Of a DNA stretch of 64,000 nucleotides, positions 692 through 62,757 are shown in pieces. The notes under the pieces are model-generated. The model ran no database searches and had not been told where the DNA came from. It worked only from the letters and a program-made list of their open reading frames with translations. Made by a program: the position numbers and the translations under genes. Where the stretch lies: positions 1-64,000 of the IMG/VR virus record IMGVR_UViG_3300035180_001778; one strand, 5' to 3'. Each line of letters starts with the position of its first letter. The stretch's first letter is position 1.

Positions 692-1081
692 ATGGCCTAC
701 GAAATTGGGGATTGGCTGGAGCTTGAAGGACCCGCCTACTGGGCTGAAGTGGTCGCTCTTTCTGCGGATGGTATCTGGCTTCTGGCGGTGGGCGAATCCG
801 TAGACACCTCATTCGAGAAGATCGAGCTTGGCTGGGCCCCGTTCAAACCGAGAGAAGGGGGCACGCTGGTCCCTCATTGGGTACACCATGACGCGGTGTT
901 CGTGGACAAGGATCCCACACACTTCCGAAATATGGTCTCCGTCGTGACCATCAAAAAGGGCTGGCTGTCTTACCGCCGGGACGACTCGAAACAATTCAGG
1001 ATTTCGTCTTGGGATGACTTCTGTTTGGAATGGTCGCCTTTGAAGCATCCCACGGCCTGGGATGCCATCCTGGAGGATTGA
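692..1081 (+). CDS. Hypothetical protein with C-terminal tag (HPTAWDAILED)
   Basis: GGTGTA motif at 675-680, 11 nt before ATG 692. Confidence 0.75.
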   Translation: MAYEIGDWLELEGPAYWAEVVALSADGIWLLAVGESVDTSFEKIELGWAPFKPREGGTLVPHWVHHDAVFVDKDPTHFRNMVSVVTIKKGWLSYRRDDSKQFRISSWDDFCLEWSPLKHPTAWDAILED

Positions 1082-1082
1082 T

Positions 1083-1445
1083 ATGCCTGACCTGGTTATT
1101 TGGGATCTGAGATTCCCCACCTCGAACTCCGAGGAGTTCACTCGTTTCCGTCACTTTCAATCAGTCTTGAGAAGCGACGAGCATGTTCAAGAGGTGCATG
1201 TCTATTCACCCCCAAACAGTGCTCAGTCTGAAATGACTGTCTGCTTCCGAGACGGGTATAGCCGGCCTCACACCCATGAAGTCCAAGGGCTCAATGTTCT
1301 GTATCCCGCTCGATGGGCGATGGGGCAACCCCAGCTCATTCGCAAATTCGTGAGCCACATCGACTATAAGCACTATGGGCCGTCTTCGGTGCCGAGTGTT
1401 CGGACGTGGCATGAGCGTCTGATGAAAGAAGACGAAGACTTCTGA
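1083..1445 (+). CDS. Hypothetical protein with C-terminal tag (RTWHERLMKEDEDF)
   Basis: Starts 1 nt after the previous stop. Confidence 0.75.
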   Translation: MPDLVIWDLRFPTSNSEEFTRFRHFQSVLRSDEHVQEVHVYSPPNSAQSEMTVCFRDGYSRPHTHEVQGLNVLYPARWAMGQPQLIRKFVSHIDYKHYGPSSVPSVRTWHERLMKEDEDF

Positions 1446-1571
1446 TTTCTGTCCGAGACACGATATCTCTGGTGTAGAGTGGGTATACGACCGGGGCTCA
1501 GAGGAGTCTCTGTCTCCCTCGGAGTCCTCAGTGGAGGACCGAGGGTCGAAACACTCACACAGAGGTGTGTC

Positions 1572-2420
1572 ATGGCGAAGATCAAGGAAGGCTCGAACTC
1601 GTTTCTACTCCAGACCCTCACGGCGGTTCTCGCTTCGGAGGGCGCTCTCCGGCCCGACAAGGTGGACGCGGTGCGGACCAAGTTCCTGGAGCGGCTGATG
1701 TCGGAGCCGATGGGCAAGCAGTACCCGGCGGAGACGAACCGCCACGCCTGGACGATACTATCCAGGCTCTTCCCCGTCACGGAACAGGCGCCGGTTCTGG
1801 ATCTTCACAAGGAGGTTCCGATCGAGGCGCTCAAGCTTCCGGAGGCTGTCCGTTCCAAGACGGAAGAGGCTCTTCGGAACTTCCTTCAGGGGAAGGAGGA
1901 GAAGACTCCGCCCTCGAACCCGGGCGTGAATCTCGCGCTCGATCCGGCGGACATGGACCTCCTTTTGGAGGACGTGAACGATGCCGCTCCGGCTGCCCTG
2001 AAGGATGGCCTTCAGGTGGCTCTGGAGGAAACGGCAGACCGTTTCGCGAAGGGGTTGAAGCACCCCTTCATCGATACTCTCCGTCACGACGGGAAGTACT
2101 ACACGGTCGTCGGTACGGCGGTCATTCACTCGGCGAAGCGGGCGGGTTGCACGAGGAACTCGAACTGCACGGTCAACAACCTCCGTCGCATCAAGGACGC
2201 GGATGAGCGCATCCTGGTCCACCGCGACGGTCGTCCGATGGTCGTCTCTCGCGAGCTGGAGAATGGTGGCGGGGTCTGCTTCGTCTGGCTTCTTCACCAG
2301 AAGCCGGGGCTGGGCATCCGGTTCTGGCTGAACGAGAGGGACAACGGGACCTCGAAGGACAACCCGCGGGGGACCTTCCGGGTCACGCTGACTGAGGATG
2401 GCTGGAAGAAGGCCGGCTGA
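1572..2420 (+). CDS. Hypothetical protein, 282 aa
   Basis: AGAGG SD before ATG 1572; followed by a terminator. Confidence 0.8.
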   Translation: MAKIKEGSNSFLLQTLTAVLASEGALRPDKVDAVRTKFLERLMSEPMGKQYPAETNRHAWTILSRLFPVTEQAPVLDLHKEVPIEALKLPEAVRSKTEEALRNFLQGKEEKTPPSNPGVNLALDPADMDLLLEDVNDAAPAALKDGLQVALEETADRFAKGLKHPFIDTLRHDGKYYTVVGTAVIHSAKRAGCTRNSNCTVNNLRRIKDADERILVHRDGRPMVVSRELENGGGVCFVWLLHQKPGLGIRFWLNERDNGTSKDNPRGTFRVTLTEDGWKKAG

Positions 2421-2424
2421 AACG

Positions 2425-2804: not shown

Positions 2805-3230
2805 TCACAGAGGATGCGAAATCTCTGTTGCCAACCGCTGTCCGAGGTCATAGGCAGTCCGGGTTCCCTCGGAAGGGAATCTAGCTGCATCGCACCCCGC
2901 GAAGAATGAGATAGTCCCGGCGACCCCGACGCCGAGGAGCCTGCTTACCGTGGCGGTGGGAGCATACCTAACCCGCATTTCGTAGATGTAGGTCTCGGCG
3001 CCTTGATTCTCGTTGAGAATCAAGGCGCCGAGGAGATTCACAGGAAGTCCTGGGTTCGATCTCCATGGTGTGCCTTGTACCCACACGTGGGAGTCTTCGT
3101 CATAGGTGACGCCCCAGTCGCCGGACTGGACGATGATGCCGCGGGCTTTGCAGGCGAGGCAGGCCGCCGTGATCCGTTCTTCGATCTCATCGAAGTCGTT
3201 GAGGATCAGGTCCCAAGCCGTCGTGCTCAT
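2805..3230 (-). CDS. Hypothetical protein with N-terminal tag (MSTTAWDLILNDFD)
   Basis: ORF; GGTGTA motif 9 nt upstream. Confidence 0.75.
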   Translation of the reverse strand: MSTTAWDLILNDFDEIEERITAACLACKARGIIVQSGDWGVTYDEDSHVWVQGTPWRSNPGLPVNLLGALILNENQGAETYIYEMRVRYAPTATVSRLLGVGVAGTISFFAGCDAARFPSEGTRTAYDLGQRLATEISHPL

Positions 3231-3469
3231 GGCCCGGCATACACCAGAAGCTTCTTGGCCATCAACGACATGAGGATCGCGTCGTTGAGGATGGGGCTCT
3301 TTTTTTGAAGGTCAGGGATCGGATCCGGGGCGTAGTACTCCGTGAGGAGGTCGCGCACGGCTGTCTCCGGCATCGGTGGCAACTTGAAGTCGTTGCAGCC
3401 GTGATTGCCGAACTCGTCGGCCGCCATCTCCAGGAGGATGCCCGCCAGCCGCATCTCGCTTGGGGTCAC
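3227..3469 (-). CDS. Hypothetical protein
   Basis: 80-aa ORF with 4-nt overlaps on both sides. Confidence 0.7.
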   Translation of the reverse strand: MTPSEMRLAGILLEMAADEFGNHGCNDFKLPPMPETAVRDLLTEYYAPDPIPDLQKKSPILNDAILMSLMAKKLLVYAGP

Positions 3470-3948
3470 AGGTCATCCTCCAGGATCTTGGCCCAAGCAT
3501 TCAACGGGCCCGCGACAACAGCCGGCGTGTCCTCCCAGAGGAGCTGCCCCTTCAGGTGAACCGGCCGCCAGAGGTGAGCCCGCCGCTCCCTCTTCCATGT
3601 GTTGTAGGGCACCTTCTGGTAGTCCCCGCCCTCGGTCGGCCAGTAAACGAAGGTCGGATTCCCGATTTCTTCGTCGGCGGTCATGTCCTGGTTCGGGTGG
3701 AAGAAGGCGTGGCCGGGGCCCTTCGCGAGCTGGACATAGCTCGGATTTGCGCCTTCCGGCTTCATGAGCTTGCGGGCGGTGAGTTCCGCGCAGCCCTTCA
3801 CCTCCATGGCGTTCTCCACGAACGCCTTCCTGAAGAGGTCTGCAACCCGGTCAGTCATTTCTGAGTTCGGAGTGAGAAAGAGGACGGATCCTCCATCGAG
3901 CACAGTCTGTGCGACTTCCAGGCGGAGTTTCTTGTCGAGCTTGGGCAT
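3466..3948 (-). CDS. Hypothetical protein with C-terminal tag (LNAWAKILEDDL)
   Basis: ORF; GGTGTA motif 13 nt upstream. Confidence 0.8.
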   Translation of the reverse strand: MPKLDKKLRLEVAQTVLDGGSVLFLTPNSEMTDRVADLFRKAFVENAMEVKGCAELTARKLMKPEGANPSYVQLAKGPGHAFFHPNQDMTADEEIGNPTFVYWPTEGGDYQKVPYNTWKRERRAHLWRPVHLKGQLLWEDTPAVVAGPLNAWAKILEDDL

Positions 3949-5964: not shown

Positions 5965-6792
5965 TCAGTCGTCGTCTTCGAGGAAGGGCCTCTGTAGAAC
6001 CTCGAACGCCGTCGGGAGCTTCGCATGCTCCGCAGCTCGAATCGCCGCAGTACGGGCGTTTGCTTGAGGGGCAGGCACAGCCCTGGAGGTGTGCTCGATG
6101 AAGCTCGGACGGGGCGCGGGTTCGTCAACCGAGCGGGTGCTCCGATCCGAGAAGATGACCTGCCCGTTTCGGGTTCGTCCGATCTCTCGCATGTTGGCCC
6201 CAACCAGCTCTCGACGGAACGCGGTCTGATCCGTCGGGGGGCGCGTGACATTGAAGCGCGGCTGGCTGGCTGCCCCCATTCCCGAAGGCCTCGCTTGCTG
6301 CACAGGGGGATCGTAATCCAGCTCCCCGGTCGAGAAATCGATGTCGAGGCTTCCTCGCCGCCCGGTATCCCTCGCCACAGCCCCACCCCAGATGTCCTCC
6401 AGGCTCCCCAGGGACGCCGCCGGGTCCTCAGCGGGCTCATCTTCGGAGTCGAAGGAGGCTGCATACTCACGCCGAAAGACGTTCCTGTCCTCTCGGGGAG
6501 CCCGAGGAACGGGCATGCGCTGCGTGTAGCCTTCGGCGGCCCTCATCTCTCGGAGGGCGCTGCTCGATAGGAGCATCTCGGGGGTGAGGTCGGGGAGCTG
6601 TTGACGGATCGCAGCTTGACTCGCGGTTCGGGCCATTGTTGCTGGTCGTTGTAGCTTGACTCGCGGTTCGTGTTGCTTCTGAGCGAGAAGCTGACGCAAG
6701 GAGCCTTCAAGACAGGAGCAAGCTCCCGCGATGTGGTCCTCCCAATAGATCATCTGATGACAGCTCTTGCATTGAGCAATGACGGTGGCCAT
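5965..6792 (-). CDS. Hypothetical protein with N-terminal CxxC and C-terminal tag (PTAFEVLQRPFLEDDD)
   Basis: 275-aa ORF with Cys pairs. Confidence 0.7.
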   Translation of the reverse strand: MATVIAQCKSCHQMIYWEDHIAGACSCLEGSLRQLLAQKQHEPRVKLQRPATMARTASQAAIRQQLPDLTPEMLLSSSALREMRAAEGYTQRMPVPRAPREDRNVFRREYAASFDSEDEPAEDPAASLGSLEDIWGGAVARDTGRRGSLDIDFSTGELDYDPPVQQARPSGMGAASQPRFNVTRPPTDQTAFRRELVGANMREIGRTRNGQVIFSDRSTRSVDEPAPRPSFIEHTSRAVPAPQANARTAAIRAAEHAKLPTAFEVLQRPFLEDDD

Positions 6793-6856: not shown

Positions 6857-7246
6857 ATGTGGCAAGAGACGGAAGACGACTTGGGGTTCCCTGTTTCCTA
6901 CGTGGCCCCCGCAGCAAAAGTCCCGTCTGTGAAGAGACCTTCCCGCACCAAAAAACCCGTCCCTGTTCCTGGAAACCCCAAGAACAAGTTCGATCACCGG
7001 CTCTCGGATGTGCGGGCTCCCGCTCTCACGGACCCTTGTTGGGTGGGGTGGACCGCCCCCATCTCCAAGTACTTGTCGGAACCTCGGACGTGGCCCCAGC
7101 TCGAAGCGTGGCGGAAGACGTCGGGGGTCTCCTCTGCCCTTCTACGGCATGGTCTCGCATGGCTCGAAGAGATGGGGCACGCGAGGTCGTACTCTCAGAA
7201 GGACGTCATCTACTGGGCTTCAAACATCACAGATTGTAGCGTTTGA
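6857..7246 (+). CDS. Hypothetical protein
   Basis: GGTGTA at 6841, 10 nt before ATG. Confidence 0.7.
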   Translation: MWQETEDDLGFPVSYVAPAAKVPSVKRPSRTKKPVPVPGNPKNKFDHRLSDVRAPALTDPCWVGWTAPISKYLSEPRTWPQLEAWRKTSGVSSALLRHGLAWLEEMGHARSYSQKDVIYWASNITDCSV

Positions 7247-8270
7247 GGCTCTTCTCCAGCATCTCGCTCTGACGTGAAGAGAGGGGCTTCTTGTCCCTCA
7301 TCAGGGTGTTGACGTTCTTCGCGAAGTTCGCGACCCACATGTCATCCTGCTCCGTTGCTGTGTCGATGAGCTTGATGCAGCGAATCCGCAATTTGGTGAT
7401 GCGCTCTTCCTCCTCGAACTTGGATCGGGCCCCCTGTTGCTTCTCGGCCAACAGCCTGGAGATCTCCGCCGGCTGCGACATCAAGAGACGGTAGCGAGCG
7501 AACCCCTTTTCGAGGGTGGCACTTTGAGCCGGGGATAGGTTCCAGGTGGTGCCCGCTCGTTCGAGCCTTGTTGCGATATCCCGAGCGAAGTTGTGCATCC
7601 ATGCGTCGTCGGAGACTTCCGCAGCACGGGCAAGAAGCCTTGCTCGGTCGATGAAGACTCGCTTCTCGGTGCGAGCTTCTTGGTCGTGCTCGTAGGGCCG
7701 GTTTGCAGCTCGTGACATGGCCTGTCGAACGGCCTGTCGAAATGGGCTCAGAGAGAAGGGGGTTGTCACCATGATGGTCTGCTTTCCTTTATCACCCCCA
7801 AAAAGCACAGCTTCATGGGCGCCCCACTCGACCGTAGGGAAAGTTTCGTCGAATACGTGATCTGCGTCGACCAACGGGTCTTCAGAATACCCCAAAGTCA
7901 CATGAGGCTTGAACTCGGGCCATTTCTTCGAGAAATCGACCCCGGCTGAGTCGAAGGCGTCCTGGAGAACTCGGTGGAAGTCGTGAAGGGCGTTGGAGTC
8001 CACCAGAGCGATCATGGGGGTCTTCTTCCCCTCCTGAGAAGGGAAAGTTGCCGCTCGACTCGTCTGCACTGAGAATGGCCTGGTCTTCGAGGCTACATCG
8101 TACAGCACACGAATGGCCTCGGTCAGAGTCTCAATGGGCACATCGTCCCCCAGATGGAGCAGCGTGATGTGCGCCTGATCCATGGGTTCCGGATTCCCAA
8201 ATCCCTTGAGGTCGATCTGCTTCAAGAGTTGAGCAGTCTCGGGCGGTACACGAAGTCTGATCATGGCCAT
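7227..8270 (-). CDS. 2H phosphoesterase (2'-5' RNA ligase-like) with C-terminal helical extension
   Basis: Two HxT motifs: AHITLLHL and PHVTLGY. Confidence 0.8.
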   Translation of the reverse strand: MAMIRLRVPPETAQLLKQIDLKGFGNPEPMDQAHITLLHLGDDVPIETLTEAIRVLYDVASKTRPFSVQTSRAATFPSQEGKKTPMIALVDSNALHDFHRVLQDAFDSAGVDFSKKWPEFKPHVTLGYSEDPLVDADHVFDETFPTVEWGAHEAVLFGGDKGKQTIMVTTPFSLSPFRQAVRQAMSRAANRPYEHDQEARTEKRVFIDRARLLARAAEVSDDAWMHNFARDIATRLERAGTTWNLSPAQSATLEKGFARYRLLMSQPAEISRLLAEKQQGARSKFEEEERITKLRIRCIKLIDTATEQDDMWVANFAKNVNTLMRDKKPLSSRQSEMLEKSLKRYNL

Positions 8271-8303
8271 CGTGTATAGGGTTTTTTTAGGAAGATCCTC
8301 AGT

Positions 8304-9047
8304 GTGATCCTGAACCTTCCTCCGTCCGCTGGGCTTGCTCGTGAGCAGGCGATCCGAGCACTCGTCGCAGACGGGACCTTCGACCCTATTCTGTGGTCCA
8401 CGGTCACCTCCGACCATGGCGAGCACCACGCCGAGTTCCAGGTCTTCTCGGATGCCCTCAAAATCGAGGGCATCCGGATCAACGCTTCCGCCGAGACAGA
8501 GCAACACCTCGCGGATCTTCTCGGCTGCTCTCTGCTCACCCCGAAGCTGGCGGATCTCATCTGGGCGCAGAAGTCCGTCTCTTTGGAGCCGTCGATTCAG
8601 CCGTTCGATTCTTCCACGGCGGCGATGCTCGCACACAGCTCACGGATCGATGCAGCTCTTGCCGCTCAAGGCAACCCCCAGGGCATCGTGTGCAACGTCG
8701 GCAAGCACTGGGTCATCGACAACGCGATTCTCTCCCACCCGGGCTTCGTCGAGAACTACGGCTGGCACTTCGAGGGCGTGGGGTTCAAGGGCATCCGAGG
8801 GGAAGCCAATGTCTCTCTCACGAAGGACTCCAAGGGGCGCTTCGTCCGCGTCATTCAGGGTTGTGGGTGGCAACACAACATGGCGCACACGGACTACAGC
8901 CAGACGGTCACCCTCGTCTCGTTGGGCTGCACGGTCGACGGTCAGGACATGCACCTGTTCGACGTGTTCCGGAGCCCGGAGCTGGCGCCCCTCGTGAGCC
9001 ACAACGGAGCGCTGAAGCTCGTGCGTCTTCCTGGCGTGGGCCAATGA
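8304..9047 (+). CDS. Hypothetical protein (NYGWH...HN.AHTDYSQ motif)
   Basis: 247-aa GC3-rich ORF ending at a terminator. Confidence 0.75.
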   Translation: MILNLPPSAGLAREQAIRALVADGTFDPILWSTVTSDHGEHHAEFQVFSDALKIEGIRINASAETEQHLADLLGCSLLTPKLADLIWAQKSVSLEPSIQPFDSSTAAMLAHSSRIDAALAAQGNPQGIVCNVGKHWVIDNAILSHPGFVENYGWHFEGVGFKGIRGEANVSLTKDSKGRFVRVIQGCGWQHNMAHTDYSQTVTLVSLGCTVDGQDMHLFDVFRSPELAPLVSHNGALKLVRLPGVGQ

Positions 9048-10609: not shown

Positions 10610-11077
10610 CTACTTCTTCTCGGTGTTCTCGACCGTCCCGATCTCATCGCCCTCTTCGAGGAGCTTTGAGTGCCAAGTGGTCGGCTCCGGCGGGATCTTC
10701 TTTGCCCGAGACTTTCGCGGGGCCTTCTTGGGAGGCGAAGGGATCTCGGGGAAGAGTTCAGGTGAGGTGTCGCCCGCGGGGCGAAGGGCCGCGATCTGTT
10801 CTCGAAGATCCGCAATCGCTTGTTGGGCTCGACCTTGGAGGTGGGTGCGCCTCTGCACCTCCTCTTCCAGTCCTTGGATCTTCGCTCTGTCCAGGCGTTG
10901 CAAGGCGTCTGCAATGCGACGGTGCTTGCGAGCCCCTCTCAGGTAGGAGTCGAAACACCCGAGGAAGAAGAACGCGTTGAGCGCAAGAACCCCCCAGGGA
11001 TGCACCTTGCACCACTCGAAGATAGGGAGCGCCCACGTCTTCAAGTCTTGCCACACTGCAACGGCGTCGGGGTTCAT
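10610..11077 (-). CDS. Membrane-anchored coiled-coil protein with tag (TTWHSKLLEEGDE)
   Basis: Hydrophobic WGVLALNAFFFLGC segment; ATG 11077 lies 10 nt from GGTGTA. Confidence 0.7.
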   Translation of the reverse strand: MNPDAVAVWQDLKTWALPIFEWCKVHPWGVLALNAFFFLGCFDSYLRGARKHRRIADALQRLDRAKIQGLEEEVQRRTHLQGRAQQAIADLREQIAALRPAGDTSPELFPEIPSPPKKAPRKSRAKKIPPEPTTWHSKLLEEGDEIGTVENTEKK

Positions 11078-11086
11078 CGCCATAGA

Positions 11087-13250: not shown

Positions 13251-13720
13251 ATGCCGAAGGTTATCGTTCTGCAAGGTCCGTCTGGGGTGGGGAAGTCCAC
13301 GATCGCCAAGAAGTTGATCGATGGCGTCCCCCAGTCCGTCATCGTCTCCACGGACGATTCGTTCATCAACGAGGCAGGCGTGTACGAACACGATCTGTCC
13401 AAGCTCGGAGAGGCTCACGGGGCGTGCTTCCGCTCGTTCCTCCGCGCTCTGGAAGCGGACAAGGCGCTCATCATCGTGGACAACACGAATACGTGCGCCT
13501 CCGAGATTTCGCCCTACATGCTCGCGGCTTCGGCCTTCGGGTACGAAGCGGCCATCCTGCGCATCGAGTGCTCCGTCGAGAAGGCGGCAGCTCGGAACCT
13601 GCACGGGACTCCCCTGGACGTCGTCCAGGCCATGGCCGCTCGGGTCGCCGAGCCCCTCCCGCTCGGGTCGCCGAGCCCCTCCCGCCCTACTGGACGGTCG
13701 AGACGATCACCAACGACTAG
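13251..13720 (+). CDS. AAA_33-like P-loop nucleotide kinase; C-terminus frameshifted by a 23-bp tandem duplication
   Basis: Walker A QGPSGVGKST; IIVDNTN motif; duplication at 13638-13683. Confidence 0.8.
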
Positions 13721-14004
13721 TCAAAGTCGTCCGTGAGAAGCTGTTCCTCAAAGGACTTCGGGGGCAGCTTCTTTTTCTGGTACTTCGGCGTTCCGTCATA
13801 CTCGGCCGCAATCCGAGACACGCAGTCCGGCCAGTGCTTGCAGCCGTAGAAGCGGCCGTAGGGACCGTCGATAAGCCTCATGGGCCCACGCTCGCAGACA
13901 GGGCAAGACAGCTTCATCCTGTGGGTGATAGCTATCTGGTTCATCCTCAACTGAACCCCCGGCAAACGCTGTTTGGGGACCCATCCTTCAGGGTAGCGTT
14001 TCAT
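13717..14004 (-). CDS. Topoisomerase-type C4 zinc-finger protein with tag (KSFEEQLLTDDFD)
   Basis: CPVC...GPYGRFYGCKHWPDC. Confidence 0.75.
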   Translation of the reverse strand: MKRYPEGWVPKQRLPGVQLRMNQIAITHRMKLSCPVCERGPMRLIDGPYGRFYGCKHWPDCVSRIAAEYDGTPKYQKKKLPPKSFEEQLLTDDFD

Positions 14005-14008: not shown

Positions 14009-14584
14009 TCACTCCCCAATGGAGTCGTCGAGGATTGCTTCCCACGCGTTCGTGACCCCGAAGTGTTCTCGCACCAAGATGGCAAGCTTTCCGCACATCT
14101 CGATGGAGAATCGGGCGATGTGGGCCTCTGTGGGGAGGATGCCCATGGTCTCAGCCATCCAGGTGTAGGCCTGGATTCGGCTCAGATTGGAGCCGGGCTG
14201 GTTCCAGATACGGTCGAAGACCAGGTGGACCGCAGTGCGGGCTTGACGGGTCGCGAGATCCCCAGGGATACCTTTCGGAGCGCCGTCTGCATTGGCCCCG
14301 TGAGTGCCCTTGCACGCGGGGTAGGAAGGGCACCCGTAGAAGAGCCCGTGCATGGACTTTCGGAGCTGCATGAATGTCTTCGCGCAGTCGGGGCACTTCA
14401 AGTCGAAGCGCTCACCCGAGAGACCCATGCCCACGGGTTTCTCGTCCATGTCGATGTCGTAGATGGTCTGAACCTTGGGGTTCTTGAACAGGTCCTCAAC
14501 CGAGATGTGGTCACACGAGGTGTACGGCTCGTTGGGGTTGAAGATGGCCCGGCAGATGAGGCAGCGCGGAGGGCTCATCCCCAT
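14009..14584 (-). CDS. DUF3268-like zinc-finger protein with tag (TNAWEAILDD)
   Basis: CPDC...FYGCPSYPAC...GIPGDLATRQAR..VH.VFD.IW...AY.WMA...HIARF. Confidence 0.75.
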   Translation of the reverse strand: MGMSPPRCLICRAIFNPNEPYTSCDHISVEDLFKNPKVQTIYDIDMDEKPVGMGLSGERFDLKCPDCAKTFMQLRKSMHGLFYGCPSYPACKGTHGANADGAPKGIPGDLATRQARTAVHLVFDRIWNQPGSNLSRIQAYTWMAETMGILPTEAHIARFSIEMCGKLAILVREHFGVTNAWEAILDDSIGE

Positions 14585-14635: not shown

Positions 14636-15148
14636 CTAGATGTCGTCGTCGTCCATCTTCTCCCAGGCCGTCGGACGACGCTGATCGTTCGGCTTCCCCG
14701 TGTCGATCGACGTGACTTGGCCGTTTTCGATGTGGATGGTCGTACGATCTGCGCCGGTCTTGACAGGATCGAAGTTGCCCATGATCCAGAACGCAGGGGT
14801 GCTCCCAGGCTCGATCGTGAGCTTGAGATTTCGGCCCCCCGTGTGTTCGATGGATAGGTCGAAATTCCGATGCGATTCTTTCCCATTGCGGACCGCCGAG
14901 CGGATTTGATACTTCCCCGGCTGAGTGGCTTGTCTCTCTCGATAGACCAGTCCCCCCGTCGAGCGGGCTCCCGCTGCAATCGGAATGTCGTCCCATTCCC
15001 CCGTTGCTGCGAACTGATGCTGCACATGGTCATTCCCCCCGATGGGGGTTGTGGCCGTGGCGACGAGCATGAGGAGGTCTTCGTCCCCTTCATCAACGTC
15101 GAGAGGTTCGAGTTCGACGACATCACATGTGAAGTTGATCCGGATCAT
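14636..15148 (-). CDS. Hypothetical protein with tag (PTAWEKMDDDDI)
   Basis: ATGA overlap with the upstream gene. Confidence 0.7.
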   Translation of the reverse strand: MIRINFTCDVVELEPLDVDEGDEDLLMLVATATTPIGGNDHVQHQFAATGEWDDIPIAAGARSTGGLVYRERQATQPGKYQIRSAVRNGKESHRNFDLSIEHTGGRNLKLTIEPGSTPAFWIMGNFDPVKTGADRTTIHIENGQVTSIDTGKPNDQRRPTAWEKMDDDDI

Positions 15149-22114: not shown

Positions 22115-22169
22115 GAGGGTGCGGTGTAAGAGAGGATCGATAACCCTTTCGTACTACCGCACCCGACGG

Positions 22170-22538: not shown

Positions 22539-22545
22539 GGTAGTC

Positions 22546-22573
22546 CTACAGCCGGGGCGGGTTTCGGATCAAC
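22546..22573 (-). promoter_or_regulatory. Class I promoter-like motif
   Basis: N16; N7 to ATG 22538. Confidence 0.8.
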
Positions 22574-22928: not shown

Positions 22929-22929
22929 T

Positions 22930-23163: not shown

Positions 23164-23170
23164 GATCAGC

Positions 23171-23198
23171 CTACAGTCCGAGGGAGCCGCCGATCAAC
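23171..23198 (-). promoter_or_regulatory. Class I promoter-like motif
   Basis: N16; N7 to ATG 23163. Confidence 0.8.
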
Positions 23199-28515: not shown

Positions 28516-28713
28516 TCAGTCGTCTTCCATGAGGTGATCGTGCCAGGTTGCTTGCTTCGATGCCTCCTCCGGCACCTCGACAATCGTCCCCGAGAAGATA
28601 GAGCGCTGCAACCAGGGCTGCCGCACCAAGTCCTCTTCGGTGATGGTCGCCCCCTTGGCGAAGAGGATGGAGTTGCCTACCCCAAAGAAGTCCTTCATTG
28701 CACGGTATTTCAT
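28516..28713 (-). CDS. Tandem paralog 3 with tag (ATWHDHLMEDD)
   Basis: MKYRAMKDFF...; ATGA overlap. Confidence 0.75.
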   Translation of the reverse strand: MKYRAMKDFFGVGNSILFAKGATITEEDLVRQPWLQRSIFSGTIVEVPEEASKQATWHDHLMEDD

Positions 28714-28898
28714 AGGTCGTCCGCGAGCAAGCGCTCTTGCCAAGTAGGGGGCTCGGATGAGACAAGCCAACCCTGCTTGATAGCGTCCTCCAGATTGTAC
28801 TCTTTCACTTCCCAGTCCGACACGATGTCGTCCTTGTAGACCGTGATGTCGCCGAGCATCAGCGAGTAGTAGAATTCTTGGGTCGCCCTATACGGCAT
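28710..28898 (-). CDS. Tandem paralog 2 with tag (PTWQERLLADDL)
   Basis: MPYRATQEFY...GWLV. Confidence 0.75.
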   Translation of the reverse strand: MPYRATQEFYYSLMLGDITVYKDDIVSDWEVKEYNLEDAIKQGWLVSSEPPTWQERLLADDL

Positions 28899-34271: not shown

Positions 34272-34299
34272 CTACAAGCTGGAGGCCCTTCGGATCAAC
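34272..34299 (-). promoter_or_regulatory. Class I promoter-like motif
   Basis: N16; N7 to ATG 34264. Confidence 0.8.
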
Positions 34300-34753
34300 T
34301 GATCCCCTCATCTTGAGGGAGAACCAGATCCCACCAGGGCATGGTGGACAGAGGCGAGTCGAGCGCTGTGATTCGGGGCTCGTAGGTCTTGAGGATCTTC
34401 TCGATCCCTTCGCGCCAGCACGAATCGTGGTCGGCGACCTTCTCCCAGGGCTTCGTGGTCTTGACGTAGCCCTTCCCCTCTTTGGGAACCATCTCGCCCG
34501 TCTGATCCTCGGGGTCCGATTCCTCCATGTCGTCGAGCGAGATGACGTTGGATTGCTCCCGGCAGTAGACCTGGACGTAGTTCGACGCGCCGTAGATCAG
34601 GACGTCGAGGTAGCGGTAGCCCTCTTCCACCTCGTGATTGGTCTGAAGGCGGAACGTGAACTTGAAGGCCTGCGGCACGGGCTTCTTGCTCTGCCACTTG
34701 CCGCAGACAGCCTCGAACGTCGTACAGATCATCGACTTGAGAATGCTTCGCAT
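34295..34753 (-). CDS. Hypothetical protein with tag-like tail (PWWDLVLPQDE)
   Basis: Class I promoter variant. Confidence 0.75.
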   Translation of the reverse strand: MRSILKSMICTTFEAVCGKWQSKKPVPQAFKFTFRLQTNHEVEEGYRYLDVLIYGASNYVQVYCREQSNVISLDDMEESDPEDQTGEMVPKEGKGYVKTTKPWEKVADHDSCWREGIEKILKTYEPRITALDSPLSTMPWWDLVLPQDEGIS

Positions 34754-38731: not shown

Positions 38732-39211
38732 TCAGCCGATTCCGTCGTCGAGGAGAGCCTTGCCGAAAGGCGTCGACTCGGGCTTCGGGGGAGGCAGGGG
38801 CTTCTGGGGCTTCGGCTTCCCCACGACGTAGAGGGTCGTCTTCGCCACATGGAAGCCGGCATCACGGGCTTCTCTCTCGCGGTTGATGTCGTCCACCGTA
38901 TCGGGCCCCTCGACGAGGAAAGCCACGACCTCATCGCGAACTTCCTCGGGGATCTGTGCGATGACCTCCGCGACGCTGGGCTTGAAGAAGCCGGCGTAGG
39001 AGAAGCTGTGCAGGGTGCGAAGGGTCAGACCATGAGGTTTGACGATCGCTTCCTCGGTAGTCAGCGTCGTCCACGAGAACGATGTGTTGCGGTGATCGCT
39101 CTTGCTGTCGTAGTAGTAGAGCTTGCCGTCTCTCTTGCCGACGGGACGGATCGTCTTCGCGCGTTTTGCCAGCTCAGGATTCGAGATGGCAGGGATGCTC
39201 AGGGTGGGCAT
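38732..39211 (-). CDS. Hypothetical protein with Pro-rich linker and tag (STPFGKALLDDGIG)
   Basis: GC3-rich ORF. Confidence 0.75.
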   Translation of the reverse strand: MPTLSIPAISNPELAKRAKTIRPVGKRDGKLYYYDSKSDHRNTSFSWTTLTTEEAIVKPHGLTLRTLHSFSYAGFFKPSVAEVIAQIPEEVRDEVVAFLVEGPDTVDDINREREARDAGFHVAKTTLYVVGKPKPQKPLPPPKPESTPFGKALLDDGIG

Positions 39212-46998: not shown

Positions 46999-47462
46999 TG
47001 AGCACCCGAGGTTGCGTGGCAGTGGGCAATTACTCCCAGTGGCAAGGCGTCTACAACCACTGCGATTCGTACCCCACAGGTCTTGGGAAAGAGTTGTGGG
47101 ATTGGGTGCAACAGGCCGGCAAAACGGGTCTGGGTTTTGACTCCCATCTCAAACTCTTGCTCAAATCGAAGAGGTGGGAAGCCTTCGTTGGCAAGAGGGA
47201 GGTAGACGAATCTGAACCCTTGATGACCAGTGAGAGATACAACTTCGATATCAGGTGGATCTATATCATCGACCCCCAAGCAGACACCCTGATCGTCTCT
47301 TACCGCAATGGGGAGGGTGGGCGGGACTCCTACGCTTTCCCGCTGGCTGGGCCCGAACCCGACTGGGCCGAACTCGAACAATGGGTGGGGAAGAACACGA
47401 CGCCGTCCACCCCGGAGCCCCCCAAGACCTTCTGGGACCAGCTCAACACGGACGAGCTGTGA
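46998..47462 (+). CDS. Hypothetical protein with tag (KTFWDQLNTDEL)
   Basis: MSTRG...YNHCDSYPTGLG; TGATG overlap. Confidence 0.75.
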   Translation: MSTRGCVAVGNYSQWQGVYNHCDSYPTGLGKELWDWVQQAGKTGLGFDSHLKLLLKSKRWEAFVGKREVDESEPLMTSERYNFDIRWIYIIDPQADTLIVSYRNGEGGRDSYAFPLAGPEPDWAELEQWVGKNTTPSTPEPPKTFWDQLNTDEL

Positions 47463-57654: not shown

Positions 57655-58650
57655 CTACCCGTCGATGAGATTCCTGTAGGGCTCGTCGTTGACCTCCGAG
57701 TAGAAGGTCTCCTTGGGGCCTTCGAACAGCGCGAGAGTCCGACGGATCATCTCGTAAGGCTGCGGATCAGTCGGGACCATCGTCCGATTGAACCCCGCGG
57801 CTTTCGTGTGTCCGCCACCCCCGAAGACCTTCGCGAACTTCGCACAGTCGAACGTCGTGTGGCTCCGCGTCGAGAACGCGAGCTTGTGGTTCTCCCCGTC
57901 GAACTGGCATGAGAACCCGATGACGAGGTCTGCATCCTCGCCAAGCAGCTCCGCTGCATCGCTCGTCGTCGTGAGCCCCTGGAAGACCACCACCCGCGTC
58001 CCGACCGGCGTCGTGTAGCGGTAGGCCCTCGCCACAATGCTCTCGACCTTGGCTTGCTGCTTCTGGACAAGGACGGGCCCGATCTCCGCAAGGTCGGACC
58101 AATCGATCGCATCACACTTGAGCCACTTCTCTCGCGGCCAGAACAGAAGCGCTTCAGCCTGAGCACAGGCTTCGAGCCAGCGAGGGCTTCTCCTCTGCCA
58201 GGTGTCCCGGATGCCAGCGAGGGTTGCGAAGTCTTCGATCAGCTTCTCATAGGCCGTGGGCCTCGTTCGGCCTGCGAGCCGGCACATCGGACGCCACACC
58301 TCACGGAAAGCGAGGACCGCTCCGGAGACACCCGGTTCCAGAGCTTCGTCTGCGTAGACGCTGTTCTCCCCGAAGGACTTGATGGTCGCCTCCGAGGACT
58401 TGTGGTGGTCGAGCACGATGGCGCCCGCGTCCACGAACTTCTGGGCCTGGTCGGCGTGAGGGGTGAAGTCGCAGAAGAGCATCCCCGGCTTGGGCTCCAG
58501 GGCGGCCAGCTCGGGGGACATGTGCCGCATGAAGACGATCTCGGCCTTGGGCAGAGCGTCATGCAGGATCATCGCTGAGGCGAGACCATCCGGGCAGTTG
58601 TCGTGAACGATGAGGGTGGTGACGGCGTCGAGCTTGTCGAGGGAGATCAT
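57655..58650 (-). CDS. DHH/DHHA1 phosphoesterase
   Basis: HDNCPDG, DFT, LDHH, GGGGHTKAAG. Confidence 0.88.
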   Translation of the reverse strand: MISLDKLDAVTTLIVHDNCPDGLASAMILHDALPKAEIVFMRHMSPELAALEPKPGMLFCDFTPHADQAQKFVDAGAIVLDHHKSSEATIKSFGENSVYADEALEPGVSGAVLAFREVWRPMCRLAGRTRPTAYEKLIEDFATLAGIRDTWQRRSPRWLEACAQAEALLFWPREKWLKCDAIDWSDLAEIGPVLVQKQQAKVESIVARAYRYTTPVGTRVVVFQGLTTTSDAAELLGEDADLVIGFSCQFDGENHKLAFSTRSHTTFDCAKFAKVFGGGGHTKAAGFNRTMVPTDPQPYEMIRRTLALFEGPKETFYSEVNDEPYRNLIDG

Positions 58651-60403: not shown

Positions 60404-60799
60404 CTACGGGAAGAGGAGCATCTTGATCCCCGCCGCCCTCGCTCGGGTGTGGCAGTCCTTCGTCCCCCGGCTGCGCTCCAGGTCGGGGGTGAAGGCGATC
60501 CCGAGGTCGAAGGACGTCCCGTCCTTGTGGGGGTGCTCGTCGCGGATCATCTTCGCGTTCCGGATCGGGCCCGCAGACTTGGGGTTGCCCGCTGCTTTCG
60601 CCGCGTCCCAGTCGGCGGGGTAGGCCCGCACCTCGAAGCCGTACTCCTTGGCCAGCTCGGTCGCCATGGCATCAGCCCCCGTCGGACAGTCCCCGTGGAC
60701 GATGATGATGCGGAGGGTCTTCTCGGCGAGCTTGTCGAAGACCCTCCGCATCCCGAGCTGGTTCTTGTAATCCCTCGACCCGGTCACGAGCACTTTCAC
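60404..60799 (-). CDS. SLOG-family (DUF2493/YspA-like) protein
   Basis: VLVTGSRDY, IVHGDCPTGAD, YPADW, AGPIRN, SRGT. Confidence 0.85.
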   Translation of the reverse strand: MKVLVTGSRDYKNQLGMRRVFDKLAEKTLRIIIVHGDCPTGADAMATELAKEYGFEVRAYPADWDAAKAAGNPKSAGPIRNAKMIRDEHPHKDGTSFDLGIAFTPDLERSRGTKDCHTRARAAGIKMLLFP

Positions 60800-61317
60800 T
60801 GGTTCTGTTCTCCTTCTGCGGACTTCTTGAGACCCCACGCTGTCAACAGCGATTTACGACTCCGGATCGCATCGAAGAGAGCGTTCCGAAGGCTCGATGT
60901 CTTCACCATCTCTCGGCGCTCTTTGGTGAGGCTGTACCACTCATTGAGCTTATCCAGCTCAGCCAACTGCTCCAGCTCCGAGAGCAGAGCGCGTTGAATG
61001 TCGTACTCGTAGTACTGCGCCGGGGGATTCTTGTACTCCTCCGCGGCCTTGGAAGTTGCAGCCTCCGGGATGTCCTTGAGCTGCTCGGTCACCTCGGTCA
61101 CCTTGCGGCCCAACTCAAGGGACATGTCCAGGGCCTTTCGGCCTTCCGTCTCCTGAGCCAGGTTTCCCGCGCAGATTTCGTTGAAGGTGAAGCGAAGCGC
61201 GTCAAACGATGCCATGAAGGCGTTGAACTGCGCCTGGCTCGTGACCGCCGGCATTTGTGCCTGAAGGGCACGGGCAAACTCCTCGTTCGGTTCCAGGGGC
61301 TCTCTGTTGTCGCTCAT
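60796..61317 (-). CDS. Hypothetical coiled-coil protein
   Basis: GC3-rich ORF in operon. Confidence 0.7.
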   Translation of the reverse strand: MSDNREPLEPNEEFARALQAQMPAVTSQAQFNAFMASFDALRFTFNEICAGNLAQETEGRKALDMSLELGRKVTEVTEQLKDIPEAATSKAAEEYKNPPAQYYEYDIQRALLSELEQLAELDKLNEWYSLTKERREMVKTSSLRNALFDAIRSRKSLLTAWGLKKSAEGEQNQ

Positions 61318-61325
61318 ACATATCC

Positions 61326-61613
61326 TCAGTGGGTGGGATGGTTGGCCCCACGAATCAGAAAATCGTAATACTTCCGAGCCTTTGACTCTGCATCGGGGAC
61401 CCCCTCCGAGCGCAAAGCGAGCTGGAATGTCCCCCGGATGAGCTGTGCGCCCTGCTCCGGGTTCGAGAGTAGTCGAAAGCATGGTCGACAATACTCGTAC
61501 TCATTTTGAGGCTCTTGCCCCATTTGTCGTACCGACTCCTTCTCGGAGTCCGATAGTCGAAGCGTGACACAGGCCGACGACTCGATCTTCTTCGAGCAAA
61601 CACAGCATTTCAT
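61326..61613 (-). CDS. Zn-binding hypothetical protein
   Basis: CCVC and CRPC. Confidence 0.7.
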   Translation of the reverse strand: MKCCVCSKKIESSACVTLRLSDSEKESVRQMGQEPQNEYEYCRPCFRLLSNPEQGAQLIRGTFQLALRSEGVPDAESKARKYYDFLIRGANHPTH

Positions 61614-62242
61614 CCGACGTCCCCATACTCTTTCAAGAGCGTGTGCTGTACGTCTTCTATCGCAAGTTTACCCGAACAGACACGCTCCGCGAGTAGTAGC
61701 GCTTTGGAGATAGGTAGAGGGATATGTTTCAACACATGCTGACGGAGCTTGGAAGCCTCCATCTGGTGGAAATCTCGAATGGTGTCCGCTCTCGGGACGA
61801 TCCCTGTTCGAGGTCCGAATCGGTGCGGGTGGCAATCGTAGGGGTCCCCCGTCGACCAGGTTGTCCTACAGACGAAGGGTCGGCCCTCGTGTGCAGAGCA
61901 CTTGCTCTCAGAGAGAAGTGGGCAAGGGATGTTGCTCAGGAACCAGACTTCATGAGCAAGGCCCCATACCTGCGTCGAGTGAGTCTGGAGCTTTGCCTGT
62001 AGGCTCGCAGTCCAAAGCCCTCGTTCGACCAGCCATCGGAAGAGACTGATACCCTCAAGAATAGAGATCCCCACAGGGTGGGAACAGCAGGCGGAGCACT
62101 TCACGACACACGAGATTACCCGTCCGAGATCCTCTGCCGTGTCACGAACCGAAGCCTCGAAGGCCCCAGCTCGCTCGAAGCGTTGAGCTTCGACCTCATG
62201 TGTGTCTCTCTCCAAAAGAAGGGGGAGCGACCGTCGGGTCAT
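61610..62242 (-). CDS. YkgJ-like (CxxCxxCC) Fe-S/Zn cluster protein
   Basis: CVVKCSACC...CPLL...CSAHEGRPFVCR. Confidence 0.75.
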   Translation of the reverse strand: MTRRSLPLLLERDTHEVEAQRFERAGAFEASVRDTAEDLGRVISCVVKCSACCSHPVGISILEGISLFRWLVERGLWTASLQAKLQTHSTQVWGLAHEVWFLSNIPCPLLSESKCSAHEGRPFVCRTTWSTGDPYDCHPHRFGPRTGIVPRADTIRDFHQMEASKLRQHVLKHIPLPISKALLLAERVCSGKLAIEDVQHTLLKEYGDVG

Positions 62243-62757
62243 TCGTCGAACTCGGCGTCATCGAGAAGATGGGTATAGGCGTTCTTCTCGGGTTTCGGCT
62301 TGACGGCGACGTGGGCGATTCGTTGCTTGACCGTCTTGAATTGCGCGGTGATGTCGATCCGCGAGCGGCCTTTCTCGTGAACGGCCACGAGGAGGTTCCC
62401 AGATTGCAGCCCCAACATGGGCGAGAAGAACACGGGCCCACCCATTCGAGCGGGGTCGCTCGCCACCCAGTCAACGTACAACCTCAAGGGTTCTTCCGTC
62501 GGAGTTGCCAGAGGCCCGATGATGCGAGCGATGTACTGCAACCGGCCCAAGCTGGGCCTGGACTGCATGACCACGAACGGCCACTCCGTCTGCGGGTTGG
62601 AGAGAACCGTCGCCTCTCCCTTGAGATCCGCATCGAAGCGAATCTCCTTCACCTGCCCGGAGGCTGCGAGAAGCTCCGACATGTGCGTACGCTTCAGGTC
62701 GTACTTGCGGACAATCCAGTGCTGCCCATCGTGCAGAAGAAGGTCTCCGAGCTTCAT
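62239..62757 (-). CDS. Hypothetical protein with tag (KNAYTHLLDDAEFDE)
   Basis: ATGA overlaps. Confidence 0.75.
   Translation of the reverse strand: MKLGDLLLHDGQHWIVRKYDLKRTHMSELLAASGQVKEIRFDADLKGEATVLSNPQTEWPFVVMQSRPSLGRLQYIARIIGPLATPTEEPLRLYVDWVASDPARMGGPVFFSPMLGLQSGNLLVAVHEKGRSRIDITAQFKTVKQRIAHVAVKPKPEKNAYTHLLDDAEFDE

What the first reader, a model, noticed from the sequence alone, without database searches (positions are those of the whole stretch)
692..62757. A shared terminal peptide tag on about 17 unrelated proteins: candidate phage-wide docking or targeting system
SEEN: unrelated ORFs on both strands carry the same short motif at a terminus. C-terminal: HPTAWDAILED* (692-1081), RTWHERLMKEDEDF* (1083-1445), LNAWAKILEDDL* (3466-3948), PTAFEVLQRPFLEDDD* (5965-6792), TTWHSKLLEEGDE (10610-11077), KSFEEQLLTDDFD* (13717-14004), TNAWEAILDDSIGE* (14009-14584), PTAWEKMDDDDI* (14636-15148), ATWHDHLMEDD*, PTWQERLLADDL*, PTWQAHLLADEII* (28516-29116), STPFSKALLDDDIG* (30451-30924), STPFGKALLDDGIG* (38732-39211), KTFWDQLNTDEL* (46998-47462), KNAYTHLLDDAEFDE* (62239-62757). 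N-terminal: MSTTAWDLILNDFD (2805-3230) and TNAWEALMADDD (kinase, 19295-20209). Weaker matches: 34295-34753 (PWWDLVLPQDE) and Dam (FAYMNALMEEF). Consensus: an N-cap T/N/S, an aromatic at +1 or +2, [ILM][LM] at about +5/+6, then an acidic tail, often after a Pro/Lys linker. KNOWLEDGE: terminal short linear motifs dock diverse proteins on one hub, e.g. the T4 clamp-binding tails of gp33/gp55/gp43 and the SSB C-terminal DDDIPF. INFERENCE: this phage tags many accessory proteins for one common partner (clamp, scaffold/compartment, protease adaptor or membrane hub). I know of no described system matching this motif.
Basis: partly seen in the sequence, partly recalled or inferred. Interest (0 to 1): 0.88.

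Follow-up and report, generated by a model that had tools for sequence, protein, structure and literature searches.

The report
Shared docking peptide on huge-phage proteins
A huge phage attaches the same short peptide (a small greasy helix followed by acidic residues) to a protein kinase and about 16 otherwise unrelated small proteins, and related phages keep it while the rest of each protein diverges, so it is very probably an undescribed address tag for one still-unknown partner.

Summary
A position matrix built from the tails splits the window's six-frame ORFs into 17 hits of at least 18 bits and a background of at most 14.4 bits. The 17 are 14 C-terminal, 2 N-terminal and 1 internal.

Shuffles give 0.6 tagged proteins against 18 observed. 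Fifty-five control phage loci have no C-terminal hit. Codons differ between tails, so selection acts on the peptide, not on a DNA element.

Orthologues keep the tag when the protein body falls to 33-48% identity or becomes undetectable. Distant homologues lack it.

Most telling is the kinase's family, found on many 100-760 kb contigs. There the same motif sits at three different places: the N-terminus and two surface loops. It is nearly exclusive with an N-terminal J-domain. It is therefore a portable, position-independent short linear motif: cap (T/N/D/S), aromatic, two aliphatics, acidic run.

The receptor is not identified. Candidates are the phage ClpX zinc-binding domain, DnaK, a vWA protein, the replisome and the capsid. 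I found no published description.

The tag is not genome-wide: it clusters in the first 63 kb of a 350-kb contig.

The parts
1046..1078 (+). C-terminal tag of gene 692-1081 (HPTAWDAILED*)
   Evidence: 24.3 bits; codons shown
1398..1442 (+). C-terminal tag of gene 1083-1445 (RTWHERLMKEDEDF*)
   Evidence: 22.8 bits
3186..3227 (-). N-terminal tag of gene 2805-3230 (residues 2-15, STTAWDLILNDFDE)
   Evidence: 21.6 bits
3469..3507 (-). C-terminal tag of gene 3466-3948
   Evidence: 22.9 bits
5968..6018 (-). Possible variant tag of gene 5965-6792 (PTAFEVLQ + RPFLEDDD*). Weak.
   Evidence: 2.0 bits only; the tail is identical in the L012 orthologue
10643..10684 (-). Tag of gene 10610-11083, ending 10 residues before the stop
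   Evidence: 23.4 bits. Kept in L012. The positional counterpart in L008 has no detectable body similarity but carries PTAWDRIQEDDDD.
13720..13761 (-). C-terminal tag of the Zn-ribbon protein 13717-14004
   Evidence: 21.9 bits; Pfam Zn_ribbon_Top1
14012..14056 (-). C-terminal tag of the DUF3268/Zn-ribbon protein 14009-14584
   Evidence: 24.0 bits. W is invariant in 8 homologues. AlphaFold2 shows a short helix with pLDDT below 50, not packed on the domain. Distant homologues lack the tail.
14639..14677 (-). C-terminal tag of gene 14636-15148
   Evidence: 23.4 bits; identical in L012
20123..20164 (-). N-terminal tag (residues 16-29) of the Ser/Thr kinase 19295-20209
   Evidence: 24.5 bits; Pkinase. 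The same motif sits at three alternative sites in homologous kinases.
28519..28554 (-). C-terminal tag of small paralogue 28516-28713
   Evidence: 27.0 bits. The L002 orthologue's body is 40% identical while 10 of the 11 tail residues are identical.
28713..28751 (-). C-terminal tag of small paralogue 28710-28898
   Evidence: 26.5 bits
28904..28945 (-). C-terminal tag of small paralogue 28901-29116
   Evidence: 23.5 bits
30454..30495 (-). C-terminal tag of gene 30451-30924, part of a ~50-nt cassette shared with 38732-39211
   Evidence: 20.6 bits; cassette with sharp borders
38735..38776 (-). C-terminal tag of gene 38732-39211 (same cassette)
   Evidence: 18.2 bits
47421..47459 (+). C-terminal tag of gene 47022-47462
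   Evidence: 24.3 bits
58222..58263 (-). Internal motif (residues 130-143) in the DHHA1-like protein 57655-58650.
   Evidence: 20.6 bits and not in the training set. The L083 orthologue has VWQRLTNTDDF at the matching place.
62242..62289 (-). C-terminal tag of gene 62239-62757
   Evidence: 19.5 bits. Linker and tag are kept in orthologues of 33-41% identity.
34298..34345 (-). Not accepted.
   Evidence: 7.3 bits
49938..49973 (+). Dam methylase tail (PFAYMNALMEEF*). Not accepted, though it is a lineage-specific extension.
   Evidence: Tail below 8 bits (it is absent from the list of all window hits of at least 8 bits). The Dam orthologue in L083 is 288 aa and ends without it.

Best explanation
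The tails are a portable short linear docking motif.

Anatomy: a helix N-cap residue (T, N, D or S), then an aromatic at +1 or +2, an acidic residue at +3, aliphatic residues at +5 and +6, then 2-5 acidic residues. A further hydrophobic residue often follows. The motif usually sits on a Pro/Lys-rich flexible linker at a protein end.

Proposed mechanism (inferred): on binding, the peptide folds into a two-turn amphipathic helix. Its W/L/L face fits a hydrophobic groove on a receptor, and its acidic run contacts a basic rim.

A lineage of huge phages uses it to tether a conserved Ser/Thr kinase, together with many small fast-evolving accessory proteins (probably host-takeover or counter-defence proteins), to one shared receptor.

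Shown: the motif, its enrichment, its conservation at the peptide level, its portability and its independence of position.

Inferred: that it binds a partner, that all copies bind the same partner, and which partner. My leading guess, about 0.3 in total, is a chaperone or unfoldase machine: either the unusually basic zinc-binding N-domain of the phage's own ClpX, used as SspB uses its tethering tail, or host DnaK, which J-domain versions of the same kinase must engage.
For: - Enrichment and bimodal scores.
- No C-terminal hit in 55 control phage loci.
- Codons vary between tails, so selection is on the peptide.
- Protein bodies are unrelated.
- Tail kept while the body diverges: 28516 has a 40% identical body and 10 of 11 tail residues identical; 62239 orthologues of 33-41% identity keep linker and tag; tagged proteins in L008 have no BLAST homologue in the window.
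- The tail is an add-on. Near DUF3268 homologues have it; distant phage homologues and the 6 bacterial/archaeal MAG homologues whose ends were read lack it.
- A ~50-nt tag cassette is shared by two otherwise unrelated genes.
- Kinase family: 45 of 120 homologues carry the motif. It lies at the N-terminus, in a loop after the GDLCDxY strand, or in a C-lobe loop.
- The cap position in 44 independent kinase copies is T26, N10, D5, S3, which is the classic N-cap set. The aromatic is W24, F11, Y9.
- Tag and J-domain are nearly exclusive: 5 of 58 J-domain kinases carry the tag against 40 of 62 without a J-domain, p=1e-10.
- Neighbourhoods of tagged kinases hold further tagged proteins: window, L096, L099 and L103, with the L008 contig as a probable fifth, so 5 of 6 loci. 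Neighbourhoods of J-domain kinases hold none: L095, L097, L100, L101 and L102, 0 of 5. My own hypergeometric calculation gives p of about 0.013.
- AlphaFold2 shows the tail as a short, low-confidence helix detached from the domain.
- ClpX candidate: a ClpX with a zinc-binding domain, a GYVG pore loop and an LGF loop lies about 7 kb beyond the window. In this clade the helix of that domain reads C[DN][KR]C and is basic, where the canonical one is acidic. Phage ClpX copies in which I found no zinc-ribbon motif come with no tags.
Against: - No binding partner was tested or could be tested with these tools.
- ClpX, the tags and the zinc-binding domain all follow one clade, so their co-occurrence is confounded by descent.
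- The 18 kb around ClpX has almost no tags.
- The tree shows that the J-domain/tag exclusivity rests on few evolutionary events: one main J-domain clade of 46 sequences.
- DnaK's substrate site disfavours acidic peptides, and acidic C-termini are poor ClpX pore degrons (both from my own knowledge).
- The tagged proteins have no known function, so nothing ties them to one pathway.
- The matrix and regex were derived from the same window. I answered this with leave-one-out scores and with independent loci.
Confidence: 0.65

Rival explanations
1. Timed-degradation tag. The peptide marks early proteins for destruction by the phage ClpX with host ClpP, or by another protease, so that they disappear later in infection.
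For: The phage ClpX keeps the pore loop and the ClpP-docking LGF loop. The tags sit at termini of small proteins in an accessory, early-looking region.
Against: Known ClpX degrons are non-polar or basic, and acidic C-termini such as the ssrA-DD control resist ClpXP (my own knowledge). The motif also works from internal kinase loops, which is unusual for a degron. The final residue is not conserved.
Confidence: 0.1
2. Virion-loading signal. The peptide binds the inside of the procapsid or a scaffold, so the kinase and small anti-defence proteins are packaged and injected with the DNA. This would resemble the T4 capsid-targeting sequence or encapsulin cargo-loading peptides.
For: Many different cargoes with one tag suit a lattice with hundreds of identical sites. 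The linker-plus-terminal-peptide build resembles encapsulin and microcompartment cargo tags (my own knowledge). Huge phages package many proteins (PMC7411985, abstract seen).
Against: No structural genes lie near the tagged genes in the 82 kb read. The T4 signal is N-terminal and cleaved. Encapsulin peptides have a different, non-acidic consensus. An acidic peptide next to packaged DNA is unfavourable.
Confidence: 0.1
3. Replisome or nucleoid docking. The tail is an SSB-type or T4 gp32/gp43-type acidic-hydrophobic tail that binds a polymerase, clamp or single-strand-binding protein.
For: The make-up (hydrophobic, acidic run, hydrophobic tip) is that of SSB, T7 gp2.5/gp4 and RB69 polymerase tails (my own knowledge). 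Two tagged proteins carry topoisomerase-type Zn ribbons.
Against: It matches neither QL[SD]LF nor DDDIPF. The last residue varies. Most tagged proteins show no DNA-related domain. No clamp or SSB was seen in the region read.
Confidence: 0.08
4. Ligand for a vWA metal-ion site. The acidic run completes the MIDAS site of the conserved vWA protein 24299-25258, which always accompanies the kinase and PurA.
For: 24299-25258 has the DVTGSM motif and a vWA fold. It is syntenic with the kinase in every phage examined. MIDAS sites bind an acidic residue of a peptide ligand (my own knowledge).
Against: The same vWA protein is present in J-domain phages that have no tags.
Confidence: 0.05
5. Not a protein signal. 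The tails would be translated by-products of a DNA element at gene ends (ribosome-binding site of the next gene, terminator, recombination linker), or of paralogy or composition.
For: In three tails (692, 3466, 14009) an SD-like GGAG or GGGGA lies within the last 33 nt, 9-16 nt before the end of the stop codon. One pair shares a near-identical 50-nt cassette.
Against: Synonymous codons differ throughout. 11 of 14 tails have no SD-like site at that distance. Tail-only shuffles that keep composition give 0.65 against 18. The motif also occurs at N-termini and inside kinase loops. The bodies are unrelated.
Confidence: 0.02

Closest known systems
SspB C-terminal ClpX-binding (XB) tail and UmuD N-terminal tether, which dock on the ClpX zinc-binding domain
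   Same: A short peptide at the very end of a flexible linker, at either terminus, tethering a folded protein to an AAA+ N-domain. A ClpX with that domain is encoded about 7 kb beyond the window.
   Different: The XB tail is basic and hydrophobic and binds an acidic domain. This motif is acidic, and the phage domain's helix is basic. Only a few adaptors use XB, against at least 17 proteins here. Binding is untested.
SSB C-terminal tip (DDDIPF) and the acidic tails of T7 gp2.5/gp4, T4 gp32 and RB69 gp43
   Same: An acidic run with hydrophobic anchors at a disordered terminus that docks in a hydrophobic pocket with a basic rim.
   Different: There, one hub protein carries the tail and many partners bind it. 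Here many proteins carry it. There is no IPF tip and the last residue is not conserved. The N-capped aromatic helix is specific to this motif.
Encapsulin cargo-loading peptides, microcompartment encapsulation peptides and the T4 capsid-targeting sequence
   Same: One terminal tag shared by unrelated cargo proteins and joined by a poorly conserved linker. Microcompartment peptides are also amphipathic helices found at either end.
   Different: The consensus differs and theirs is not acidic. No shell, encapsulin or scaffold gene was seen in the 82 kb read. The T4 signal is N-terminal and removed by the prohead protease.
Sliding-clamp-binding motifs (QL[SD]LF; PIP box)
   Same: A short motif at an N- or C-terminus, or internal, on many unrelated proteins that converge on one hub.
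   Different: No glutamine anchor, a different spacing, and a required acidic run.
Eukaryotic hydrophobic-x-x-hydrophobic-hydrophobic / LxxLL acidic amphipathic motifs (activation domains, nuclear-receptor boxes)
   Same: The W-x-x-[LI]-L core with acidic flanks, which folds on binding.
   Different: Different domain of life and different receptors. The likeness is physical chemistry only.
J-domain, the N-terminal module of the homologous kinases (for example Mycobacterium phage Colt gp251)
   Same: In the same kinase family it is nearly mutually exclusive with the tag, so both may act as recruitment modules.
   Different: A J-domain is a roughly 70-residue folded domain that binds Hsp70. The tag is about 12 residues, and its receptor is unknown.

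Membership tests
Bacterial beta-clamp-binding motif | Consensus QL[SD]LF or QLxLxL with a conserved Gln | tested here: not met
   None of the 17 tags, nor the 44 kinase copies, has this pattern.
SSB C-terminal tip | An acidic run ending in IPF-COOH, with the final Phe and free carboxylate essential | tested here: not met
   Final residues are D, F, L, K, D, E, I, D, L, I, G, G, L, E. The motif also occurs internally.
ssrA-type ClpXP C-degron | A non-polar C-terminal tripeptide (LAA-like) with a free carboxylate | tested here: not met
   The tails end in acidic or mixed residues. N-terminal and loop placements exist.
SspB-type ClpX tether | A terminal peptide after a flexible linker | tested here: met
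   Linkers are enriched in Pro (1.7 times) and Lys (1.6 times). The tail has pLDDT below 50.
SspB-type ClpX tether | A ClpX with an N-terminal zinc-binding domain is present | tested here: met
   L004:1390-2640 has zf-C4_ClpX plus AAA domains.
SspB-type ClpX tether | Direct binding of the peptide to the zinc-binding domain; XB-like basic consensus | not testable with these tools
   The sequence is acidic, not XB-like. The only hint is reversed charge on the domain's helix.
T4-type capsid-targeting sequence | An N-terminal ~10-residue signal removed by the prohead protease | tested here: not met
   14 of 17 tags are C-terminal, and no protease-site pattern is present.
Encapsulin or microcompartment cargo peptide | A shell protein gene (encapsulin, BMC-H) in the same genome | tested here: inconclusive
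   No such Pfam hit among about 50 proteins scanned. Only 82 of 350 kb could be read.
Membrane or secretion sorting signals (Sec, Tat, sortase, PEP-CTERM) | A hydrophobic span and basic residues | tested here: not met
   The tags are about 12 residues, net acidic, with no hydrophobic span.
Kinase phospho-acceptor or docking site | An obligatory Ser/Thr at the conserved polar position | tested here: not met
   That position is T26, N10, D5, S3 in the kinase copies, which is the N-cap set and not S/T only.

The most novel reading that the evidence does not exclude
Huge phages of this lineage run their own protein-addressing system. A genetically encoded ~12-residue tag can be copied between genes as a cassette. 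It delivers a kinase and dozens of fast-evolving effectors to one phage- or host-encoded receptor, whether an unfoldase, a chaperone or a compartment. It would be functionally interchangeable with the J-domain used by sister lineages, including Bixzunavirus mycobacteriophages. This would be a viral counterpart of cellular targeting signals, and a handle to pull out a whole set of unknown host-takeover proteins at once.
Probability: 0.35. Interest if true: 0.9.

Novelty: new variant of a known kind. Interest (0 to 1): 0.78.

Why it matters
Most genes of huge phages have no known function. A shared address tag groups at least 17 such genes in this window with a conserved kinase into one functional set, and similarly tagged genes appear in related huge-phage contigs. 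It also predicts a single receptor that an affinity pull-down with a 15-residue peptide could identify.

The tag gives a sequence rule for finding further members in metagenomes. It is a natural portable tag for engineering. It also offers a testable link between phage kinases, J-domains and the host or phage chaperone and unfoldase machinery.

Tried and rejected
- Megablast of 20 kb against cultured phages gave no match.
- Pfam, PHROGs and NCBIfam on the tagged proteins gave almost nothing. The exceptions were two Zn ribbons, the kinase and a few PHROG families of unknown function.
- Seven literature searches found no description of this motif, of a phage ClpX function or of J-domain kinases. 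One review only speculates on jumbo-phage ClpX.
- A scan of bacterial genomes with the DUF3268 family found homologues without tails and gave no clue to the host.
- The cluster look-up gave no organism names.
- The idea that acidic ends are ribosome-binding sites of downstream genes fits at most 3 of 14 tails.
- The idea that the conserved Thr is a phosphosite is rejected, because N and D replace it.
- The idea that J-domain and tag replaced each other repeatedly is not borne out. The tree shows mainly one J-domain clade, so the exclusivity rests on few events.
- A profile search of the 12-residue motif against the 1.8-billion-protein library was not run. About 20 bits cannot reach significance there.
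- Walking the contig was limited to kb 1-82.6, so I have no genome-wide count and made no search for a clamp, SSB, ClpP or capsid genes.

Full report
**Source and setting**

The window is the first 64 kb of a 350,469-bp viral contig, IMGVR_UViG_3300035180_001778. It has about 60% G+C. No cultured phage resembles it at the DNA level.

My codon-usage gene calls give about 108 genes, mostly small and mostly on the minus strand. The recognisable genes are accessory functions:
- a 2H phosphoesterase (Acb1/LigT-like)
- NAMPT, a Nudix protein and adenylosuccinate synthetase
- a dNMP kinase
- two vWA proteins
- a transglycosylase
- a type IB topoisomerase and Dam
- a Ser/Thr kinase

Yes. All listed peptides are present in frame next to a stop or start codon.

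- A regex written after seeing the tails hits the last 25 residues of 18 of 108 proteins. Whole-protein shuffles give 0.61 and tail-only shuffles, which keep tail composition, give 0.65. The enrichment of C-terminal over other positions is 17-fold, p=1.6e-12.
- That regex is post hoc, so I also counted all gapped patterns without prior choice. The top three-element pattern is aliphatic-x-acid-acid (21 tails against 5.9 expected, p=4e-7). The top two-residue pattern is WxxxL (11 against 2.8).
- MAFFT aligned 16 tails without gaps. The polar cap and the two aliphatic positions line up, and the aromatic sits at +1 or +2.
- A matrix built from that alignment gives leave-one-out scores of 10-24 bits.
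- Over all six-frame ORFs of the window it gives a bimodal result: 17 hits of at least 18 bits, and the next best is 14.4.
- The 17 are 14 C-terminal, 2 N-terminal and 1 internal hit that was not in the training set (57655-58650).

**Controls outside the window**

The matrix finds no C-terminal hit in 18 distant or unrelated phage loci. It finds none in 37 low-GC phage loci, which show 7 scattered internal hits. It finds none in 10 bacterial or archaeal MAG loci.

**Is it protein or DNA?**

Leu, Asp, Glu and Thr codons differ freely between tails. SD-like sequences for the downstream gene lie in only three tails. The motif also occurs at N-termini and inside proteins. Selection is therefore on the peptide.

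There is one exception. Genes 30451 and 38732 have otherwise unrelated bodies but share a ~50-nt near-identical stretch. It begins just before the tag and ends at the stop codon. The tag has been copied between genes as a cassette.

**Are the carriers unrelated?**

With the tails removed, BLAST links only the two Zn-ribbon proteins. The three tandem 62-71-residue genes at 28516-29116 look like old paralogues.

Apart from two Zn ribbons, the kinase and the weakly DHHA1-like 57655-58650 (the internal-hit protein), the tagged proteins match no informative family.

**Conservation**

- A 275-kb relative (L002/L012, about 85-95% identical) keeps every tag examined. For 28516 the body is only 40% identical while 10 of the 11 tail residues are identical.
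- DUF3268 homologues down to 46% identity keep the tail, and its Trp is invariant. More distant phage homologues and the 6 MAG homologues whose ends were read stop right after the last domain helix.
- Orthologues of 62239 at 33-41% identity keep both the KPK linker and the tag.
- A much more distant relative from another metagenome (L008 and L083, about 40-50% identity) carries PTAWDRIQEDDDD, RTWYSRILDDD and TVWDRLGTIGDDDD. Two of these are on proteins with no BLAST homologue in the window.
- The system therefore persists while its carriers turn over.

**The kinase family**

The kinase has 234 homologues, many on contigs of 100-760 kb.

- 45 of the 120 listed carry the motif at 10 bits or more.
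- An alignment shows it in three different places: before the kinase core (as in the window), in a loop just after the GDLCDxY strand, or in a C-lobe loop.
- Across 44 non-window copies the consensus is basic-basic-x-x-[T26 N10 D5 S3]-[A/R]-[W24 F11 Y9]-[D/E]-[K/R/H]-[L/I]-L-[E/D]-D-D-D.
- The polar position uses exactly the four classic helix N-cap residues. This argues for a short N-capped amphipathic helix and against a phosphorylation site.
- AlphaFold2 of 14009-14584 agrees: a short helix over AWEAIL, pLDDT below 50, not packed on the domain.

**J-domain versus tag**

About half of the kinase homologues carry an N-terminal J-domain instead (HPD motif; one has Pfam DnaJ). This group includes the kinase of Mycobacterium phage Colt.

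- J-domain and tag are nearly exclusive: 5 of 58 against 40 of 62, p=1e-10.
- The tree shows that this rests on few events, with one main J-domain clade.
- Neighbourhoods of tagged kinases contain further tagged proteins in 5 of 6 cases (window, L096, L099, L103 and probably the L008 contig). Five J-domain neighbourhoods contain none. My own hypergeometric calculation gives p of about 0.013.
- The tag is thus a lineage-level system of which the kinase is the most widely conserved member.

**What it most likely does**

The evidence fits a docking motif. It folds on binding into a two-turn amphipathic helix that fits a hydrophobic groove, and the acidic run contacts a basic rim. That all copies bind one receptor is inferred from their shared consensus. 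I could not test binding.

Receptor candidates seen:
1. The phage's own ClpX, about 7 kb beyond the window. It has an intact pore loop and an LGF ClpP-docking loop. In this clade its zinc-binding domain has a basic helix where canonical ClpX has an acidic one. That would be the reverse of the basic SspB tail on an acidic domain.
2. Host DnaK, by analogy with the J-domain versions.
3. The vWA protein 24299-25258, whose MIDAS site could take an acidic ligand. This protein also exists in phages without tags.
4. A replisome component or the procapsid. Neither was seen in the 82 kb available.

**Limits**

- The tag is not genome-wide. Contig kb 64-82 hold no hit at 12 bits or more; kb 64-74 were scanned with the matrix, and two weak-looking tails there and in kb 73-82 were judged by eye.
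- Only 82 of 350 kb could be read.
- The host is unknown.
- The matrix was trained on this window.

**Novelty**

Terminal peptides that address many proteins to one hub are a known principle. Examples are clamp-binding motifs, SSB tails, SspB tethers and encapsulin or microcompartment cargo tags.

This motif matches none of them (see the membership table). Seven full-text searches and one review found no description. I rate it a new variant of a known kind, with a real chance that the receptor makes it something more.

Noticed in passing
L004:1390-2640 (contig 71326-72576, just outside the window); L083:2728-5076: The phage encodes a ClpX with a zinc-binding domain, a GYVG pore loop and an LGF loop. 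In a distant relative the same gene (782 aa) carries an intein (Hom_end_hint / LAGLIDADG). The helix of the clade's zinc-binding domain is basic (C[DN][KR]C), not acidic.
   Followed up: partly
window 19295-25258; L095, L096, L097, L099, L100-L103: A conserved module of Ser/Thr kinase, vWA protein (phrog_2971, DVTGSM MIDAS motif, vWA fold by AlphaFold2/Foldseek) and PurA, in several loci with NAMPT and/or a Nudix gene nearby, is shared by many huge phages and by Bixzunavirus mycobacteriophages (Colt gp251-253). In the loci I read, the gene order is vWA-PurA-kinase in several tag-bearing phages (L096, L103, the P0041 contig) and kinase-vWA-PurA in most J-domain phages (L095, L097, L100, L101).
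   Followed up: partly
P0018-P0130; L100:5638-6711: About half of this kinase family are J-domain-kinase fusions. I found no publication describing them.
   Followed up: partly
window 30451-30500 and 38732-38781: A ~50-nt near-identical cassette with sharp borders ends at the stop codons of two genes whose bodies are unrelated. This is evidence of recent tag transfer or gene conversion.
   Followed up: yes
window 25334-25513 versus 24299-25258: A 59-residue ORF just upstream of the vWA gene begins with nearly the same N-terminal peptide (MG-SS-YSE-F) as the vWA protein, then runs into a Pro/Thr-rich tail. It may be a duplicated gene start.
   Followed up: no
window 38044-38397 and 38394-38729: Two adjacent paralogues (117 and 111 aa) share a different conserved C-terminus (AAW-A-RKA-G-PV*). 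This is a second recurrent ending, unlike the acidic tag.
   Followed up: no
window 30454-30462, 38735-38743, 14012-14023, 10625-10645; L038:3592-4059: Several tails end in an extra D/E-I-G element (DDDIG*, DDGIG*, DSIGE*, GDEIG..., EEEDIG*). This may be a second anchor within the tag.
   Followed up: no
window 7227-8636: A 2H phosphoesterase (LigT / 2',5' RNA ligase family) with a sub-threshold match to the anti-CBASS protein Acb1. Relatives (L008, L103) have it too. The region looks like a counter-defence and NAD-metabolism island.
   Followed up: no
L002:5593-6052 and L012:10593-10824: In the 275-kb relative, the orthologues of 38732 and 13717 appear split by frameshifts, yet the tag-coding end stays intact in its frame. 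This could be an assembly error or real decay.
   Followed up: no
window 31152-33722: An 856-residue protein with an N-terminal hydrophobic segment is about 30% identical to proteins of Ackermannviridae and Aeromonas phages, several of which are annotated there as vWFA-domain proteins. It was the most useful marker for finding relatives.
   Followed up: partly
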